40,160 nt of DNA from Octopus bimaculoides. Taxonomy: Eukaryota. Numbering within the stretch: position 1 is the stretch's first letter; the number at the start of each line of letters is the position of its first letter. The notes below the pieces were generated by a model, which was not told the origin of the DNA, did not search any database, and was given only the letters and a program-made list of their open reading frames with translations. This document shows, piece by piece, positions 1,115-40,160 of this stretch. The stretch spans positions 67,612,086 to 67,652,245 of the forward strand of contig NC_068986.1 in assembly GCF_001194135.2 (NCBI RefSeq). Direction: 5' to 3'. A program made the position numbers and the translations under genes.

Positions 1115-1377
1115 NNNNNNNNNNNNNNNNNNNNNNNNNNNNNNNNNNNNNNNNNNNNNNNNNNNNNNNNNNNNNNNNNNNNNNNNNNNNNNNNNNNNNN
1201 NNNNNNNNNNNNNNNNNNNNNNNNNNNNNNNNNNNNNNNNNNNNNNNNNNNNNNNNNNNNNNNNNNNNNNNNNNNNNNNNNNNNNNNNNNNNNNNNNNNN
1301 NNNNNNNNNNNNNNNNNNNNNNNNNNNNNNNNNNNNNNNNNNNNNNNNNNNNNNNNNNNNNNNNNNNNNNNNNNNNN
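1115..1377. other. Assembly gap (N run)
   Basis: Ns. Confidence 1.
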
Positions 1378-8095: not shown

Positions 8096-8235
8096 NNNNN
8101 NNNNNNNNNNNNNNNNNNNNNNNNNNNNNNNNNNNNNNNNNNNNNNNNNNNNNNNNNNNNNNNNNNNNNNNNNNNNNNNNNNNNNNNNNNNNNNNNNNNN
8201 NNNNNNNNNNNNNNNNNNNNNNNNNNNNNNNNNNN
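8096..8235. other. Assembly gap flanked by (CA)n and (TA)n
   Basis: Ns. Confidence 1.
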
Positions 8236-9759: not shown

Positions 9760-10517
9760 NNNNNNNNNNNNNNNNNNNNNNNNNNNNNNNNNNNNNNNNN
9801 NNNNNNNNNNNNNNNNNNNNNNNNNNNNNNNNNNNNNNNNNNNNNNNNNNNNNNNNNNNNNNNNNNNNNNNNNNNNNNNNNNNNNNNNNNNNNNNNNNNN
9901 NNNNNNNNNNNNNNNNNNNNNNNNNNNNNNNNNNNNNNNNNNNNNNNNNNNNNNNNNNNNNNNNNNNNNNNNNNNNNNNNNNNNNNNNNNNNNNNNNNNN
10001 NNNNNNNNNNNNNNNNNNNNNNNNNNNNNNNNNNNNNNNNNNNNNNNNNNNNNNNNNNNNNNNNNNNNNNNNNNNNNNNNNNNNNNNNNNNNNNNNNNNN
10101 NNNNNNNNNNNNNNNNNNNNNNNNNNNNNNNNNNNNNNNNNNNNNNNNNNNNNNNNNNNNNNNNNNNNNNNNNNNNNNNNNNNNNNNNNNNNNNNNNNNN
10201 NNNNNNNNNNNNNNNNNNNNNNNNNNNNNNNNNNNNNNNNNNNNNNNNNNNNNNNNNNNNNNNNNNNNNNNNNNNNNNNNNNNNNNNNNNNNNNNNNNNN
10301 NNNNNNNNNNNNNNNNNNNNNNNNNNNNNNNNNNNNNNNNNNNNNNNNNNNNNNNNNNNNNNNNNNNNNNNNNNNNNNNNNNNNNNNNNNNNNNNNNNNN
10401 NNNNNNNNNNNNNNNNNNNNNNNNNNNNNNNNNNNNNNNNNNNNNNNNNNNNNNNNNNNNNNNNNNNNNNNNNNNNNNNNNNNNNNNNNNNNNNNNNNNN
10501 NNNNNNNNNNNNNNNNN
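9760..10517. other. Assembly gap (N run)
   Basis: Ns. Confidence 1.
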
Positions 10518-14530: not shown

Positions 14531-14829
14531 ATTGTCGCTGCCTCATGTAAATGAACTATCATCGTAGCTTATCAGACCATTGATTACACTAATTTACCTG
14601 CCGTTTTCTTCTTTCTCTTTTTTTCTTCTAGTTATTCACGGCAACAGTGAGATTGAACGCAGCAATAACAGCGCAGGTAATCACGGCAAACAATAGCGCA
14701 CGCCACTCAGGGATGGATTTAGGCTAGAGAAGTTGCGCTCCCTATCTGATGGATGACTATGGTCCTACATATGTATATATATGTGTGCGTGTGTGCGTGT
14801 GTGTGTGTATACATGCATATGTAGACACA

Positions 14830-16394: not shown

Positions 16395-16700
16395 TGTGTG
16401 TGTATGTATGTATGTGTATGTGTATATACATACATATATATGTAAATATATAAATATATCTATATATGTATGTATATAAATACGTATATACATATATGTA
16501 TATATATATATATGTTTATATATATGTATATATATATATGTATATATATATTTATATACACATGTATTTACGTATATATATGTGTGTGTGTATACATATG
16601 TATATATGCATATTCATATATGAATATCTATATGTATATATGTACATATCTCTCTCTCTATATGTATATATTATATATATACATACATATATATATATAA
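16395..16700. repeat. TA-rich degenerate microsatellite
   Basis: Direct inspection. Confidence 0.9.
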
Positions 16701-16733
16701 GATAATATCACGCGCATGACTGATCAGACATAA

Positions 16734-16893
16734 NNNNNNNNNNNNNNNNNNNNNNNNNNNNNNNNNNNNNNNNNNNNNNNNNNNNNNNNNNNNNNNNNNN
16801 NNNNNNNNNNNNNNNNNNNNNNNNNNNNNNNNNNNNNNNNNNNNNNNNNNNNNNNNNNNNNNNNNNNNNNNNNNNNNNNNNNNNNNNNNNNNN
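16734..16893. other. Assembly gap, probably spurious (identical 35-bp sequence on both sides)
   Basis: aagataatatcacgcgcatgactgatcagacataa occurs at 16699-16733 and 16925-16959. Confidence 0.85.
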
Positions 16894-17067
16894 TATATAT
16901 ATATTCGGATACATATATATATATAAGATAATATCACGCGCATGACTGATCAGACATAATGCATTGATAAACACACATGCATAAAAATATATATCTACAT
17001 CTATCTATATATATATACTGTTGAATGCACCAACGTTTTCGCTGATTAAGTAGTTTTTTAATCGAGA

Positions 17068-22734: not shown

Positions 22735-25330
22735 TATTTGTTTGCATAAAATATTATATTACATATTTTCACTTCCACGATATAATATCGTATAGAATCC
22801 ACAGAAACGTCCAAATCTTCATCTAATTGACTAAAGTAACTAATTGGACAAGTTAGAGATCAATACTTTGCTTTGTCTTTGTTTCTTAGCTATCGATTTT
22901 GATACTAAATTTGCATTTTTCTTTACGTTTGGTTTTAATTTATTTACATATATTTTTATGTTGCATTTGCATTTATATTCAAGCTTATTTTAAATCTTAG
23001 TCATTTGATTTTAGATTTCAGTCCGTATCTCATCACTTAATAGCAAAATAATAACATGCAAAGACGCACTATGTCAAAAACTCAGCAGTATTATAATTGT
23101 AACATTTCTTTTGGTGCTCTTGATTTATTGAAATTATTCTGCTGTTTTACGTGTTTTATATTGATTTTTATGTAATGCATTATATTTTGTTGTAACTCCT
23201 ATCTTTAAAAGCGTTCATTCCGTGTCAATTTGACCCCGATATCTTGACGAATCTATGGCTGTTACGCCATAAATACCTAAATTTCGGGAGTTTGTGAAGT
23301 ATTTAAGACAAGAACTAATTGAAATAACCATAATTAGCATTCAATTAAATGAGATTTTCAATCGAAACTTGTATCCAGTTCTTTTTTCGGTGTTATAGGA
23401 AAGCGGTGGCTCAACGTTGCACAAATCTGTTGATGCAAATTAGAAATAATAAAGCAAGAATGCTCAACAGATATATATCTGGAGAACGGTGTGGAAAAAG
23501 AATGGTAGGGAAAGATATTTTTAAGAGACATTACAACAAAAACAACAACAAAAATACGTAACTAAACCATAATTTTAAATGTTGTAATATTAGGCAAGTT
23601 AGATAAGGGAACGCCATTATTATTTTTATAATACACAAGAAAAGACTTTTGAGGTTTTGTGCAAAATATTTATTTTCAGCTCACTAATTTAAGGTTGAGT
23701 GTCTACATATTTGAGTTGATTGAAAGTAGAGGAAATAAAATTTAAAATATTAACCTAGAAAATGCAATATCATAGCTGAAATATTTGTTACTCATTGAAG
23801 GGTCTTTGTTATGATTATTTCAGAGAATTTAGATCCGATCAGTTTGTAATAGCTTCCAACTGATGCCAACGCGATGATAATCAATTAAAATCTCCTTTAT
23901 TTTCATGTAATTTATAGTGCTCAATCTCTAGAATTCATAGTTTTATCATATGTGATAGATAAACAATCAGATACGCCTTTTAAATATTTTGCATCCATTT
24001 TCATAAAACATTTACTCGTGATATAACAAATTCCTTATTGATTTCTTATATAAGCAAAAAGCCTGAGATCTGACGGGAAAGGAAATTACTGCTTTAAAAA
24101 ATGCATTAGCTGCGTAAAAGTAAATGTTTATTTTCAAGTGGGTTATATTACTAATTGCACTTCATTTAACTCAAATGTAAACGGTAATTTTTTAAATTTT
24201 TGCTATTATTAAAAGGCCATTATGTATAAAACTTATTTCATGGATATTGTGATAAGTGTAGAAAAATATATATTAAGACTATTCACAATCTGGCTTTGTC
24301 TCGTATTGGAATCATTTCATATGTTTCTGAAAAATATATCGTCACATCTCACTTTCCTTAACTATAATATTTGTCAGGCTTCTTACTTATGTAACAAATT
24401 ATGATTTACATGCATTATATGATTCTTGCCATATACTCCATGTAAATTATCGCATTATGGTGGTATTTTGTTTGCATGAGACAAAGTATTTTGTCAAATT
24501 AGAATATAATTACATCATTCTCTAATATAATTTCGAGCTGTTTAAATTGTTGGACAGAATCTAAGATATAAAGTGCTTTCATGGTTGTTACGAGAACCAA
24601 TTCTAGATTATAAATATATCAGAGATGGAGCAAAGATAGTATAATAGTGAGGGGATATAGTATCAGGTTTTCTTCGCTTGCGCTTAACTCTTACGCGGCT
24701 TGCACCTTGGGTTGAACTATAGCAGGGACGTATGTTCAGGGTGTGCTACAAGGGCACTAATTCTATTTTACATTTGTTCAATAATTATCAACATAACACA
24801 ATATTTATTAACAAAAAACAAATTTGTAAGTGATATGCAATTTCATAAAATGAGAAACAATTTTCAGCACACCCTGATCTTACTCCCTCGGTACGCCAAT
24901 GAACGATAATATATGCATTTTGCTGCCAGTCAGATTCATACGAGTATTATGGAACGCTTCCATATGAAAAATATTCATGAATCTCTAAGTTTGCTAAATG
25001 CACTCTCAACTTTGTCCTTTTTTAAAATTTCGCTCATATATATATTTTGTATAACCTAGTACATATTTTTCTATTGATTCATTTACTTATTTTAAGATTG
25101 CTAAATTTTCTGCTTTCAATTGAGGAGTTGGAGATCGAAGCTTTCATGAATTATGGACATTTCATTGCTTTTAAGCGCCGATAAACTTTGCACTTTTACT
25201 GCTTTTCTTTAATGCTTACAAGAATTTCTGGAATGGTTTTTAATCGTTTTATACTCAATTTATTCTATATACTGGCTTAGATTACGTTATTAAATTTGAA
25301 CTAAAGCATTTGTATTTTCAATGATTTCAG

Positions 25331-25485
25331 ATTTTCATGGAGTTCATGCTGCCAAGCTGGAAGACACACAAAGGCTACATCGAGATTTATTTCACCGTTA
25401 CAACACCATGGTACGCCCGATCCAGGATCAAGACAAACCTGTTACAATAAATATGGATTTATATCTTATGAGTATTACGTCACTG
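25331..25485 (+). CDS. Internal coding exon (exon 2 type) of a Cys-loop ligand-gated ion channel subunit, nAChR/5-HT3/AChBP-like: (D)FHGVHAAKLEDTQRLHRDLFHRYNTMVRPIQDQDKPVTINMDLYLMSITSL
   Basis: The pattern RL.RDLF.RYN..VRP.....PVT.....YL.SI..L is the canonical alpha-helix/beta-1 start of the pLGIC extracellular domain. Acceptor catttgtattttcaatgatttcag| (phase 1) and donor CTG|gtcagt (phase 0) fall where nAChR genes have introns (after the signal-peptide exon, and just before DEKNQ). VHA-A resembles a signal peptidase site. Confidence 0.85.
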
Positions 25486-25789
25486 GTCAGTACTAATGAT
25501 TTTGAATTTTTTAAAAATTTATGATTCGATGGTTACACACAATTTCACAACGAGATAAATTCTACAGGGATAGTTCGTGTTTGAATCTCTTTCGTGATGT
25601 TGTAATGTAATGTTGATAATTTCAGAATCCATTACTTCATAATCCCTTAAATAAATATTATCAGATCTGAATCTGTATGTCAGATATTTTATTTATCCAT
25701 CAATTAAAACATCCAAGGCATTTGAGCAAATAATAGGAGCTCTGCATCATATGTCCCTTCGAGTATCCATAAAACCTGATCTCACTTTG

Positions 25790-28780: not shown

Positions 28781-29175
28781 TCTCTTTTCTCTTTACACTT
28801 TTACTCTTTTACTTGTTTCAGTCATTTGACTGCGGCCATGCTGGTGCACCGCCTTTAGTCGAGCAAATCGACCCCAGGACTTATTCTTTGTAAGCCTAGT
28901 ACTTATTCTATCGGTCTATTTTGCCGAACCGCTAGTTTACGGGGACGTAAACACACCAGCATTGGTTGTCAAGCGATGTTGGGGACAAACACAGACACAC
29001 AAACATACACACACACACACATACATACATATATACGACGTGTACCAAATCCACTCAAAAGGCTTTGGTCGGCTCGAGGCTATAGTAGAAGACTCTTGCC
29101 CAAGGTGCCACGCAGTGGGACTGAACCTTGAACCATGTTGTTCGTACGCAAGCTACTTACCACACAGCCACTCCT
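28781..29175 (-). mobile_element. Full-length tRNA-derived SINE family A
   Basis: Minus strand starts aggagtggctgtgtggtaagtagc (A box TGGCTGTGTGG), has B box GGTTCAGTCCC, an internal (TG)n tract, and a tail gactgaaacaagtaaaagagtaaaag. Confidence 0.9.
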
Positions 29176-31920: not shown

Positions 31921-32431
31921 GTTTAGATATACTTTTAGTTTAGTAGTTTACACTACCTTACGCTTGTATATACTCTTATACATTCAAAGTTCACAAATTT
32001 CCTTATTTAAATTATGAATCATATTTCTTTCGATAATATCAATATGATTACAAAACTTCTGGATTCTGTTGCTCTACACATAGCGACGTTTAGCTGGTCC
32101 GGTGTAAACATCAGAGTGGCTAAAAATACACCTACTCGATCTAAAGTCTGGCCCTGCGCCTTGTTGCTGTGAATGTGCGATCGGGATTATTAGGAATCTA
32201 TCCATCTATAATAGGAAATAAAGGGATAGTATCGCAAATCCAAACCCTCTAAATTCACAAACTATACGGTGGGTCGGGGAATCCAGAGTTAATCCTCCTC
32301 GCTGGAGTTTTAATAAAAAAAAAATCAAAGGTGATTTAATAATGCAAAACTCATTATCAGTAATTGCTTAGTATACGAGATTAAAAAAGTAAATAAAAAT
32401 TAAGTGTGGTTGTGGTGGTAGTGGTGGCGGG

Positions 32432-32745
32432 GTCTTCGGTAGAATAGAGAGAGTTTCTAAGAAATGTTTCTTAGTGGAAGTACTTGATCATTCTGAGCAG
32501 ACTTTGACAGCATTAATTCAACGATGGATTCTGCCAGAGAGTCACATAGTAAGTGATGGCTGTCGATCATACCATAATATTGGAATTTTAAATGGTGGCG
32601 CATACACTATCAATGCGATTGTACATGAAGAAAATATCGGAAACATGTGGATGCGTGTTAAACGCAAATTATGCTGTCAATTCGGCACTTCAGTGGCTTT
32701 CTTTTGTTTCGTATTTGCACGAATTTATATGGCGTAATCCAGTGA
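32432..32745 (+). pseudogene. Merlin/IS1016 (ISXO2-like) DDE transposase relic
   Basis: VFGRIERVSKKCFLVEVLDHSEQTLTALIQRWILPESHIVSDGCRSY...VHEENIGNMWMRVKRKL..QFGTS, then a frameshift to FVSYLHEFIWR. This matches the ISXO2 pattern WVFGG.ER...F.V.V.DR...TL..II...I.PG..I.SD...Y...H.NF...IE..W...K...YL.EF.WR, with the NFVDP..G.HTQ segment deleted. Confidence 0.85.
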
Positions 32746-33000: not shown

Positions 33001-33617
33001 TACTGTGATAATTAACTGCTGCTCTCTACAGTTTGTTCCTATAGTGGTGACGAAGTTGACAATGGACACATCTTCTGCTGATGAATCTGAAAATTTCTTT
33101 ATTTGGTGTATCATCGTTCCTGCAGCTACTACTGTTGCTGTGATTGTAGATACTATTATATTTGTTATAGTTATTGTTTTAAATGTCGGTGTGGTCGTAG
33201 TTCTCGATTTCGTCGACACAGTTGCTACCGATGGCAGTCATTTGACTTAGTGTGAGTAAAGAGAAATCGGTGCAATTTAGTATCGTAGTCAGAATAATCA
33301 TTCCTTTCCTACCATCTTTCACAGTTCATTGGGCGTATATATTTTGTTGTCAGTGTGATTTTAAACATTAACATTTCGGATATGGTGTAATTTTTGTCAT
33401 AAAAGAGATCTCCAATTGTTGCTTCCCACTTCACACAGTGACGTAATGATTTCTTGTTTAACAAAGTATCCTCTCACCAAAATAATTGATTAAATAAACA
33501 AAAACAACGTACTCCCAACAAAACAATTAGCAGTATACGAGCCAAAGTGAAGCACATCCGATAATCAAAAGCAGCAGCAACAATAACAACAATGACAACA
33601 ACAACAGCAACAAGAAC

Positions 33618-33662
<45 letters not shown>
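33618..33662. repeat. (AAT)n microsatellite, target of the adjacent Dong/R4 insertion
   Basis: Direct inspection. Confidence 0.95.
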
Positions 33663-33664
<2 letters not shown>

Positions 33665-34098
33665 AAATAGACCAGATATAGTTGTCAAAGATCATGAAGG
33701 AAAAAAATGCCTTCTAATTGATGTTTCAATACCAGCAGATGACAACGTTTCTCTAAAAGAAATGGAAAAACTTTCAAAATACAAAGACCTGGAAATAGAG
33801 ATAACTCGAATGTGGAATCTAAAAACAGAAACAATTCCTATCATAGTAGGTGCCTTAGGTATAATAAAAAAATATTCAGACAAATACATAACAAAAACAC
33901 CAGGACTTACAAATATATATAACATACAGAAAATTGCACTACTGGGTACTGCACACATTCTACGCAAAACACTTTCAATACAGTAAACATAAGAGCACCA
34001 CAGCAAACCACAGCACATACCCAAGGCGCACAGAGCTGCGCTCGGTAGTGAAGTGAAAGCACGTTATAAAAATAAAACTACTGAATAATAATAATAAT
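33663..34098 (+). mobile_element. 5'-truncated young Dong/R4-clade non-LTR retrotransposon (restriction-like endonuclease domain, 3' UTR, (AAT)n tail)
   Basis: Uninterrupted ORF 33663-33986: TNRPDIVVKDHEGKKCLLIDVSIPADDNVSLKEMEKLSKYKDLEIEITRMWNLKTETIPIIVGALG...LGTAHILRKTL, carrying the PD...D...K RLE catalytic motif. Flanked on both sides by (AAT)n. Confidence 0.92.
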
Positions 34099-38544: not shown

Positions 38545-38600
38545 GCCCATATATATATGTAATAGTGTATGTATATATGTAGCATGTGTATAAGTAAACG
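38330..38600. repeat. (TA)/(CA)/(TACA) compound microsatellite
   Basis: Direct inspection. Confidence 0.95.
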
Positions 38601-38626
38601 TATAGTATGTATTTGTGCTTGTAACA

Positions 38627-39748
38627 GAACCAGTTAAATGCAGACAACTTGATAATTAATCATCTTTCTCACTCCACATAGCTTGCAGACTGTACTTTTC
38701 TTCATCTTTATATCTCTCCCCACCTCTCTCTCTCTCAGTCGTCCTCTATTTACTTCTCTTTTTGTTTCCCCCAATTCTCTCTCTATCTATCTTTATATGT
38801 CTCTCTTTCTATCTCCTTGTTTTCAGTGATACATAGAGAGATCGATAAATGTCATATACGGGAATAGCAGTGCTTTCAAGAAATTTGCTTGAAAAATATA
38901 TCATTCCCGATTCGATTCCATTTCAGTGTTTTCCATAATAGCCGCAAGATTACCAATACATTTCAATGAAATTCGGGTCCAAAAACTGTGCACATTCGCG
39001 TCGTATAAGCATCTATGTATATTTGTGAGCATGTTTCTATTTTACTGTACATCAGCAGGGAATATAAACATCGACAAAATCTGGTGTTCTTTGACTCAAG
39101 TCTACAATATTACACAATTCTCTCCTTCTGTTCCTAGAATTTCGGTTATTAAAGTATGATTGATGAACAAAAAATCTAAGATTCTGTTGTTCACAGCTTA
39201 CAAGGAAAAACTGAGAAGAGTAAATGTGGAAATAAATTATGTTATATAAATAATGTGATCACAAATTCTGTAGATTGAACGCATAATTAAGGAAAAATAT
39301 TGTATGTACCGGCTTTCGCCGATGTTTATATACTTTACCGATATGTAGTAAGATATAAAAATGTCCTACATATATACATAGATGCACATACGACGAGAAT
39401 CCGCACACTTTGGGACCCAAATTGTATTCAAATGATATTGGTCATCTTGCAGCTATTATGAAAGATACCAAAATAGAATTGAACTGAGAGTAATATGTTT
39501 TTTTAAGCAAATTCCTAAAAAGCATTGATATTCCCGCATATGACATTTATCGATCTCTGTATGTATCACCACAAAGAAAAAGAGAGAAGGTGTGAGGGAG
39601 GAGAGAGATATGTAAATAGAGGGGGAAACGACAGGGAGATAAATATATATAGAGAGAGAGACAGATGTAAAGATTGAGGAAAACACAGACCACAAGCTAC
39701 GTCAAGCGAGAGAGATGATTTATCAACTTGTCTGTATTTAACTAATTC
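38627..39748. repeat. ~1.1-kb imperfect palindrome (long inverted repeat with ~3-nt central loop at 39177-39179)
   Basis: Arms pair over their whole length. Examples: agttaaatgcagacaacttgataa (38632-) with ttatcaacttgtctgtatttaact (-39743); gatacatagagagatcgataaatgtcatatacgggaat with attcccgcatatgacatttatcgatctctgtatgtatc; ccataatagccgcaagattacc with ggtcatcttgcagctattatga; centre tgaacaa-aaaatc-taa-gattctg-ttgttca. Confidence 0.92.
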
Positions 39749-40160
39749 AAACGCACATACATACACATTACATGTATACATATATTTATTGAATGCATAG
39801 TTTAAAAAAAACTAAGGGATTTAATATATGTACGCTAAACAGCGTTAGATTATAATACGGATGAGTATAGCATCTGCAAGATATAAACAAACATGTAATG
39901 ATACTAGGTGCAATAAATTTTCTAACTGAAAATTTCTTAAAGAGGGTTGTATATCAAAAAGAAATGGCTTCACTCAGAACGACGCTGGATCGCCATGCAC
40001 GGTGCTTTAACCTCATTTCATTTCCTCGGGGATGAATAGCCCAACCTTTTTTTTAGTTAAACCACACACACACACACACACACACATACACTACATGTAT
40101 GTTTTACCAACAGGTCTTCGACAGCAAAGATAGACACATTTTGAGTATATATATATATAT

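What the first reader, a model, noticed from the sequence alone, without database searches (positions are those of the whole stretch)
25331..25485. Exon of a divergent Cys-loop receptor subunit in a probable octopus genome
Seen: a clean 155-nt exon with the pLGIC N-terminal signature and nAChR-conserved intron phases (1 then 0). The beta-1 strand reads MDLYLMSITSL rather than the canonical nAChR-alpha FGLxLxQIIxV, so it looks divergent. Known: molluscs have expanded atypical nAChR-like families, AChBPs and, in cephalopods, chemotactile receptors (CRs). From memory (verify), octopus CR coding sequences are largely intronless, so an intron-containing divergent subunit could be a non-CR atypical lineage or a relative of the CR ancestor. 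Inference: it may be an uncharacterised or unannotated receptor.
Basis: partly seen in the sequence, partly recalled or inferred. Interest (0 to 1): 0.7.

Follow-up and report, generated by a model that had tools for sequence, protein, structure and literature searches.

The report
Annotated octopus nicotinic-receptor-like exon
This is a real coding exon, but it belongs to an octopus gene for a divergent nicotinic-receptor-like channel subunit that public genome annotations already contain, so only the untested function of that subunit remains open.

Summary
Window 25331-25485 (+) is a 155-nt exon with an AG acceptor and a GT donor, phase 1 then 0. It passes Pfam's Neur_chan_LBD threshold, and three other cephalopod loci conserve it under strong purifying selection.

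It is not unannotated. Its 51 residues are 100% identical to RefSeq proteins named 'neuronal acetylcholine receptor subunit beta-3', isoforms X1-X3 in Octopus bimaculoides and X1-X5 in O. sinensis. Argonauta hians has an ortholog. In O. bimaculoides the gene spans about 408 kb.

Its peptide matches O. bimaculoides 15/15 and O. sinensis 14/15.

The full protein has a ligand-binding domain, a Cys-loop, transmembrane helices and a cation-type GEK pore motif. It lacks the alpha-subunit signature: there is no loop-C cysteine pair, and the residues aligned to alpha1 Tyr93 and Tyr190 are Gly and His. It is only about 30% identical to every solved nAChR and to the orphan annelid receptor Alpo4, yet 84-98% conserved among cephalopods.

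It is not a chemotactile receptor: those genes are intronless and they score worse against it. I found no functional study of this gene. Already known, low interest.

The parts
25331..25485 (+). Constitutive 155-nt coding exon, phase 1 in and phase 0 out. It encodes (D)FHGVHAAKLEDTQRLHRDLFHRYNTMVRPIQDQDKPVTINMDLYLMSITSL, which is the mature N-terminus, the N-terminal alpha1 helix and the beta1 strand of the extracellular ligand-binding domain.
   Evidence: sequence and translation. (Pfam LBD, 28.9 bits, above the cut-off of 26). (100% identity to XP_052824798-800 and XP_036360202). (conserved splice sites; dN/dS 0.028). (the ortholog mRNA contig L004 is collinear with genomic DNA only across these 155 nt). 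(in the model of P0010, helix 34-53 and strand 70-85).
25329..25330 (+). Splice acceptor AG of the exon, preceded by a T-rich tract (tttgtattttcaatgatttcag).
   Evidence: TTTCAG is conserved in L001, L002 and L003.
25486..25487 (+). Splice donor GT (gtcagt). In the mRNA the next coding residues are DEKEQ.
   Evidence: GTAAG is conserved in L001-L003. The junction ITSL|DEKEQ is present in the annotated proteins.
14632..14676 (+). 45-nt cassette micro-exon of the same gene, phase 1 in and phase 1 out. It encodes (V)IHGNSEIERSNNSA(D), inserted between the signal-peptide exon and the 155-nt exon. Isoforms X1 and X2 include it and X3 skips it. AG lies at 14630-14631 after a polypyrimidine tract of about 30 nt, and GT lies at 14677-14678.
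   Evidence: tblastn E=1.9e-6, 14/15 identity to O. sinensis. (15/15 identity to O. bimaculoides X1/X2; absent from X3, from O. sinensis X3 and from the Argonauta model). (sequence and splice sites).

Best explanation
The segment is a constitutive coding exon of the Octopus gene that RefSeq calls 'neuronal acetylcholine receptor subunit beta-3' (O. bimaculoides XP_052824798.1, XP_052824799.1 and XP_052824800.1; O. sinensis XP_029637862.2, XP_036360202.1 and others). The gene spans about 408 kb, and only two of its small exons fall in this 40-kb window.

Shown:
- The exon encodes the mature N-terminus, the N-terminal helix and the first beta strand of the extracellular domain.
- The whole protein (474-489 aa) has a pLGIC ligand-binding domain with a C-x13-C Cys-loop.
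- It has the Pfam Neur_chan_memb transmembrane region and helices in the TM1-TM4 positions of the model.
- Its TM2 carries the cation-type GEK motif and the 9' Leu.

Inferred:
- The protein lacks the loop-C vicinal cysteines, and the residues aligned to alpha1 Tyr93 and Tyr190 are Gly and His. It therefore cannot supply a classical principal (+) face for acetylcholine.
- It keeps the loop-B Trp, the residue aligned to alpha1 Tyr198, and an aromatic residue (Tyr) at the loop-D position.
- It therefore most likely works as a non-alpha (complementary or accessory) subunit of a heteropentameric cation channel, co-assembling with alpha-type subunits.
- Alternative splicing of the 45-nt cassette changes the extreme N-terminus and adds an N-N-S sequon.
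For: Exon reality and identity. Annotation: P0010, 83% identical to the probe protein P0003; the list of RefSeq accessions and names in the cluster. Gene size. Domain content: (Neur_chan_LBD 188 bits; Neur_chan_memb 37.5 bits, cut-off 28.1). Residue mapping against muscle alpha1 (9avu_A): searches give Y93->G134, W149->W191, Y190->H232, C192/C193->S234/R235, Y198->Y241, position 55->Y96, with Cys-loop C170/C184 kept. TM2 reads SGEKLMLATTTLLAYAVLL. Fold: pLGIC, with the top 50 PDB matches all nAChRs. Strong constraint: Octopus is 98% identical to Argonauta and 84-86% identical to the other cephalopod transcripts over LBD-TM3.
Against: The functional part is inference from sequence only; there is no expression, assembly or electrophysiology data. 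Subunits that lack the CC tip can still form functional or orphan homomers (Alpo4, CRs). The outer-ring (20') residue is Arg rather than the usual acidic residue, which is unusual for nAChRs. The name 'beta-3' is automatic: identity to alpha1, alpha6 and Alpo4 is equally about 30%, so orthology to vertebrate beta3 is not supported. Exon 1 and all downstream exons lie outside the window, so the gene structure rests on the public models.
Confidence: 0.85

Rival explanations
1. Same exon and gene, but the product is an orphan receptor gated by something other than acetylcholine, as a homomer or with paralogs. This follows the pattern of annelid Alpo4, the cephalopod chemotactile receptors and the octopus dopamine-gated DopC1.
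For: The best solved-structure match is the orphan Alpo4 (8bx5, E=8e-51), which also lacks the CC tip (PMC10338036). Half of the aromatic box is replaced. Cephalopod nAChR-like channels with non-ACh ligands exist (10.1101/2025.04.02.646353; PMC11526382). The high conservation across cephalopods shows a constrained function of its own.
Against: Alpo4 is only 29.6% identical, no closer than alpha1 or alpha6. No ligand or homomeric-assembly evidence exists. Non-alpha accessory subunits show the same losses.
Confidence: 0.3
2. The exon belongs to a chemotactile receptor (CR), or to the intron-containing parent lineage from which the CR retrogenes arose.
For: [quoted passage not shown]
Against: CRs are intronless (PMC11526382, PMC13174522), whereas this gene has large introns and spans about 408 kb. 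For the exon peptide, squid CRB1 scores E=1.3 against 0.0023 for alpha9. No CR chain appears in the best 60 sequence matches or the best 50 fold matches for the full protein. The gene appears as one locus per species in the searches, not as an expanded family.
Confidence: 0.05
3. A pseudo-exon or a chance ORF with a weak domain resemblance.
For: Long stop-free stretches are common in this repeat-rich window, and no other LBD or TM exon lies within 40 kb.
Against: 100% identity to annotated proteins. The frame and splice sites are conserved, with dN/dS 0.028. A 2.5-kb ortholog transcript contig carries exactly this exon spliced to its neighbours.
Confidence: 0.01
4. A soluble AChBP-like protein rather than a channel subunit.
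For: Molluscs have AChBPs, and the exon alone cannot tell the two apart.
Against: The full-length products carry the Neur_chan_memb domain and predicted helices in the TM1-TM4 positions.
Confidence: 0.01

Closest known systems
RefSeq gene models 'neuronal acetylcholine receptor subunit beta-3' of Octopus bimaculoides (XP_052824798.1, XP_052824799.1, XP_052824800.1) and O. sinensis (XP_029637862.2, XP_036360202.1 to XP_036360205.1), plus Argonauta hians GAB1608589.1
   Same: The window's 51-aa exon peptide is 100% identical. The 45-nt cassette matches O. bimaculoides 15/15. This is the same gene.
   Different: Nothing at the sequence level. The names (beta-3, eat-2, alpha-5, alpha-6 for isoforms of one gene) are automatic and mutually inconsistent. 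Older O. bimaculoides models (XP_014770912.1, A0A0L8HPK5) started at the internal Met of this exon and were partial.
Alpo4, the orphan nAChR-like receptor of Alvinella pompejana (PDB 8bx5; PMC10338036)
   Same: It is the best solved-structure sequence match (E=8e-51). It is lophotrochozoan, lacks the loop-C CC tip, is phylogenetically isolated, and has no known agonist.
   Different: Only 29.6% identical. Alpo4 keeps the key aromatic binding residues according to its paper, whereas the octopus protein has lost two of them.
Vertebrate non-alpha and accessory nAChR subunits (beta3, alpha5, muscle beta/epsilon)
   Same: Cation-type GEK pore, Cys-loop, no functional principal face. Muscle and neuronal nAChR chains dominate both the sequence and the fold matches.
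   Different: About 30% identity, with no closer affinity to beta3 than to alpha1 or alpha6. Orthology is not shown. Co-assembly is untested.
Cephalopod chemotactile receptors (CRT1, CRB1)
   Same: Cephalopod nAChR-derived subunits that have lost ACh-binding signatures.
   Different: CRs are intronless retrogene expansions (PMC11526382), whereas this is a single intron-rich 408-kb gene. CR chains score below classical nAChRs.
Bivalve expanded nAChR-like genes, for example Argopecten irradians XP_069122364.1
   Same: 33% identical. It shares the loop-A 'GN' replacement of Tyr (LIIGNA vs LLLGNSA), the W-x-PGG motif before the Cys-loop, the absence of a CC tip, and GEK.
   Different: Low identity. 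That model is a tandem fusion of several units. The relationship is suggested by alignment only and not tested by a tree.

Membership tests
Pentameric ligand-gated ion channels (Cys-loop receptors) | Neur_chan_LBD extracellular domain | tested here: met
   The exon peptide alone scores 28.9 bits (cut-off 26). The full-length P0020 scores 188 bits.
Pentameric ligand-gated ion channels (Cys-loop receptors) | Cys-loop, two cysteines 13 residues apart containing FPFD | tested here: met
   C170-RLNITSFPFDRQT-C184 in the annotated protein aligns to alpha1 C128/C142. It lies outside the window.
Pentameric ligand-gated ion channels (Cys-loop receptors) | Four transmembrane helices (channel, not soluble AChBP) | tested here: met
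   Neur_chan_memb scores 37.5 bits (cut-off 28.1). The model has helices 254-277, 283-306 and 312-346 and a C-terminal helix at low confidence. All lie outside the window.
Cation-selective nAChR/5-HT3 branch | TM2 intracellular-ring Glu (GEK) rather than PAR/PAK, and 9' Leu | tested here: met
   SGEKLMLATTTLLAYAVLL aligns to alpha1 SGEKMTLSISVLLSLTVFL. Selectivity itself was not measured.
nAChR alpha-type (agonist-binding principal) subunit | Vicinal Cys pair at the tip of loop C (alpha1 C192-C193) | tested here: not met
   Ser234 and Arg235 occupy the aligned positions.
nAChR alpha-type (agonist-binding principal) subunit | Aromatic box residues aligned to alpha1 Tyr93, Trp149, Tyr190, Tyr198 | tested here: not met
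   G134, W191, H232 and Y241: two of the four are kept.
Cephalopod chemotactile receptors | Intronless (retrogene) coding sequence | tested here: not met
   The exon is flanked by introns of at least 10.6 kb upstream and more than 14.6 kb downstream within the window. The gene spans about 408 kb. CRs are intronless according to PMC11526382 and PMC13174522.
Cephalopod chemotactile receptors | Clusters with CRT1/CRB1 rather than with classical nAChRs | tested here: inconclusive
   CR chains are absent from the best 60 sequence matches and the best 50 fold matches, and CRB1 scores E=1.3 for the exon peptide. No tree was built, because CR sequences could not be fetched.
Vertebrate CHRNB3 orthologs (as the RefSeq name implies) | Closer to beta3 than to other nAChR subunits | tested here: inconclusive
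   Identity is about 30% to alpha1, alpha6 and Alpo4 alike. No beta3 chain is among the top PDB matches. No tree was built.
nAChR gene structure | Exon for helix alpha1 plus beta1, bounded by a phase-1 and a phase-0 intron, with the second intron just before the DEKNQ motif | tested here: met
   Phases 1 and 0 read directly from the sequence. The next residues in the mRNA are DEKEQ. That vertebrate genes share this position is prior knowledge and was not re-checked here.

The most novel reading that the evidence does not exclude
This gene is single-copy, intron-rich and highly conserved in cephalopods, yet it is otherwise isolated (at most about 35% identity to anything outside cephalopods in these searches). 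It could be an undescribed functional class. One possibility is an orphan channel with a non-cholinergic ligand. Another is an obligatory partner that reshapes octopus nAChR, or even CR, complexes. In either case its extreme N-terminus would be tuned by a regulated 45-nt cassette exon.
Probability: 0.2. Interest if true: 0.45.

Novelty: already known. Interest (0 to 1): 0.15.

Why it matters
For the genome scan, this is a true positive of exon recognition but not a discovery: the gene is already in RefSeq for two Octopus species and annotated in Argonauta. What remains is modest and still real. Cephalopods carry several nAChR-like lineages of unknown function (10.1101/2025.06.15.659772; PMC13174522). 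This subunit is strongly constrained across cephalopods and lacks the alpha signature, and I found no functional study of it. It is a reasonable candidate for the oocyte-expression screens already used on octopus ligand-gated channels. The automatic names (beta-3, eat-2, alpha-5, alpha-6 for isoforms of one gene) are misleading and should not be read as orthology.

Tried and rejected
1. The word-index search with the 51-aa peptide returned only two ORF calls on genomic DNA and no annotated protein. This was a false negative of the index. The exhaustive search, followed, found the 100%-identical RefSeq proteins.
2. Further exons in the window were sought four ways, and all gave nothing beyond the 155-nt exon and the cassette:
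   - motif regexes for beta2, loop A, FPFD and TM2;
   - enumeration of 39-51-nt AG...GT mini-exons downstream;
   - tblastn with P0003, P0010 and P0011.
   Exon 1 (MAIYLTACVTYILLFLE) was not found. It may lie upstream of the window or in an N gap.
3. A 'DLFRRYSYSIRP' match at L001:13243-13344 looked like a duplicated exon. It is a chance match next to a poly-A tract.
4. P0004 (1463 aa, 79.5 bits, no aligned stretch) is a highly repetitive protein. I rejected it as spurious.
6. Rfam gave no hits in the window.
7. The original CR papers (PMC10228259, PMC7605239) are not held. Supplements of two preprints contained neither the accessions nor 'beta-3'. No paper cites the accessions.
8. Look-ups of isoform X2 returned nothing, because only the longest product of a gene is indexed. 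Isoform X1 gave the gene span but no DNA.
9. The third homology search, restricted to LBD-TM3, found only cephalopod orthologs.

Full report
**Observation.** An AG at 25329-25330 follows a T-rich tract, and a GT at 25486-25487 follows the last codon. The length is 155 nt, that is 2 nt plus 51 codons, so the entry phase is 1 and the exit phase is 0. Translation from 25333 gives FHGVHAAKLEDTQRLHRDLFHRYNTMVRPIQDQDKPVTINMDLYLMSITSL. This peptide alone exceeds Pfam's gathering score for the neurotransmitter-gated channel ligand-binding domain (28.9 bits against 26, profile positions 2-39). Its best solved-structure matches are nAChR alpha9, alpha6, alpha1 and alpha7. Squid CRB1 appears only at E=1.3.

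**Is it a real exon?** A word-index protein search found two ORF calls (P0001, P0002) made on genomic contigs of other organisms. I fetched their loci, L001-L003.
- Only the exon plus about 30 nt upstream aligns between these loci and the window. The TTTCAG acceptor and the GTAAG/GTCAG donor are conserved.
- Differences are almost all synonymous. Window vs L001 gives pN 0.12 against pS 0.80 (saturated). L001 vs L002 gives dN/dS 0.028.
- A 2.5-kb transcript contig from a further relative (L004, run SRR24189498) encodes a complete 468-aa protein. It is collinear with the genomic loci only across these 155 nt. This is what splicing at these sites predicts.

A pseudo-exon or a chance ORF is therefore excluded.

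**Which gene?** The exhaustive HMMER search with the peptide found P0003, a full-length pLGIC subunit. Searching with P0003 and listing the cluster gave RefSeq proteins from three taxa:
- O. sinensis XP_029637862.2 and XP_036360202.1 to XP_036360205.1;
- O. bimaculoides XP_052824798.1, XP_052824799.1 and XP_052824800.1;
- Argonauta hians GAB1608589.1.

There are also a partial O. vulgaris model and older partial O. bimaculoides models. Most are named 'neuronal acetylcholine receptor subunit beta-3'. Other isoforms of the same gene are named eat-2, alpha-5 or alpha-6, which shows that the names are automatic. The window's 51 residues are 100% identical to the Octopus and Argonauta proteins. The first search had missed them, which was a false negative of the word index.

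**Second exon and gene span.** tblastn with the annotated proteins found a second exon in the window at 14632-14676. It is 45 nt long. AG lies at 14630-14631 behind a long polypyrimidine tract, and GT lies at 14677-14678. It encodes (V)IHGNSEIERSNNSA(D). It is identical to O. bimaculoides isoforms X1/X2 and differs by one residue (N for D) from O. sinensis. It is skipped in isoform X3 and absent from the Argonauta and P0003/P0009 sequences. The window is therefore Octopus, and most consistent with O. bimaculoides. The N-gapped, 33% GC, microsatellite- and SINE-rich sequence fits that. Neither the signal-peptide exon nor the next exon (DEKEQ...) is in the window. The O. bimaculoides gene spans about 408 kb in GCA_001194135.2, which explains why.

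**What the product is.** The annotated protein has Neur_chan_LBD (188 bits) and Neur_chan_memb (37.5 bits, cut-off 28.1). An AlphaFold model has mean pLDDT 65, and mostly 70-90 in the LBD and TM1-TM3. It shows the pLGIC fold, with the window's exon forming helix 34-53 and strand 70-85. The 50 best Foldseek matches in the PDB are all classical nAChR chains.

Aligned to muscle alpha1:
- the Cys-loop cysteines, Trp149 and Tyr198 are kept;
- Tyr93 is Gly, Tyr190 is His, and the Cys192-Cys193 pair is Ser-Arg;
- the loop-D position is Tyr;
- TM2 reads SGEKLMLATTTLLAYAVLL, with the cation-type GEK motif and the 9' Leu.

Identity is about 30% to Alpo4 (the best hit, E=8e-51), to alpha6 and to alpha1 alike. 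Among cephalopods it is 84-98% over LBD-TM3. Outside cephalopods the best relatives found are 30-35% identical. They include a scallop protein that shares the Gly-for-Tyr loop-A change.

**Mechanism.**
- Shown: a cation-type, four-TM pLGIC subunit without the alpha signature.
- Inferred, most likely: a non-alpha (complementary or accessory) subunit of a heteromeric cation channel. The alternative cassette modifies the extreme N-terminus.
- Main rival (about 0.3): an orphan receptor for a non-cholinergic ligand, as found for Alpo4 (PMC10338036), the CRs (PMC11526382) and octopus DopC1 (10.1101/2025.04.02.646353).
- The CR hypothesis is weak. CRs are intronless (PMC11526382, PMC13174522), and CR chains score below classical nAChRs. 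A proper tree could not be built here.

**Verdict.** Novelty: already known. Interest is low. The residual interest is that this conserved cephalopod subunit has, as far as the held literature shows, not been characterised functionally.

Noticed in passing
It encodes (V)IHGNSEIERSNNSA(D), with a strong polypyrimidine tract and AG/GT splice sites. RefSeq isoforms X1/X2 include it and X3 skips it. It adds an N-N-S sequon to the N-terminus.
   Followed up: yes
window 32393-32734 (+): An ORF with an IS1595/ISXO2-like DDE transposase domain remnant (Pfam PF12762, E=9.9e-6, 26.1 bits, just under the cut-off of 27). It is probably a decayed DNA transposon in the intron.
   Followed up: partly
window 33531-33983 (+): A 151-codon ORF with a long poly-Asn run and a C-terminal part that resembles retroelement-associated proteins of marine invertebrates (resemblance from memory). 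It has no Pfam hit.
   Followed up: partly
window 28798-29025 and 125-373; 29113-29134 (-): Two inverted copies (71% identity) of a SINE-like element. A 22-mer of the octopus SINE, recalled from memory, matches at 29113-29134 with 2 mismatches (0 expected by chance).
   Followed up: partly
window 38589-39085 and 39308-39784: An inverted repeat pair of about 500 bp (72% identity), separated by about 220 bp, near the 3' end of the window. Its nature is unknown; it may be a foldback element or two TE copies.
   Followed up: no
window 1115-1377, 8096-8235, 9760-10517, 16734-16893: Four assembly gaps (runs of N), mostly next to microsatellites. The last gap is flanked by a 95%-identical direct duplicate (16672-16733 / 16896-16959), which suggests an assembly artefact. 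Exon 1 could in principle be hidden in one of the three gaps upstream of 14632.
   Followed up: partly
RefSeq isoforms (outside the window), P0018/P0021/P0022/P0024 vs P0020/P0010: A second alternative micro-insertion of 8 residues (DWSFWTSQ) lies at the start of TM3 in isoforms X1, X3 and X4. Isoform X5 is truncated after it.
   Followed up: no
tool behaviour: The word-index homology search with the 51-aa peptide missed 100%-identical RefSeq proteins that are in the same collection. 'No annotated hit' from a short query should not be read as 'unannotated'.
   Followed up: yes
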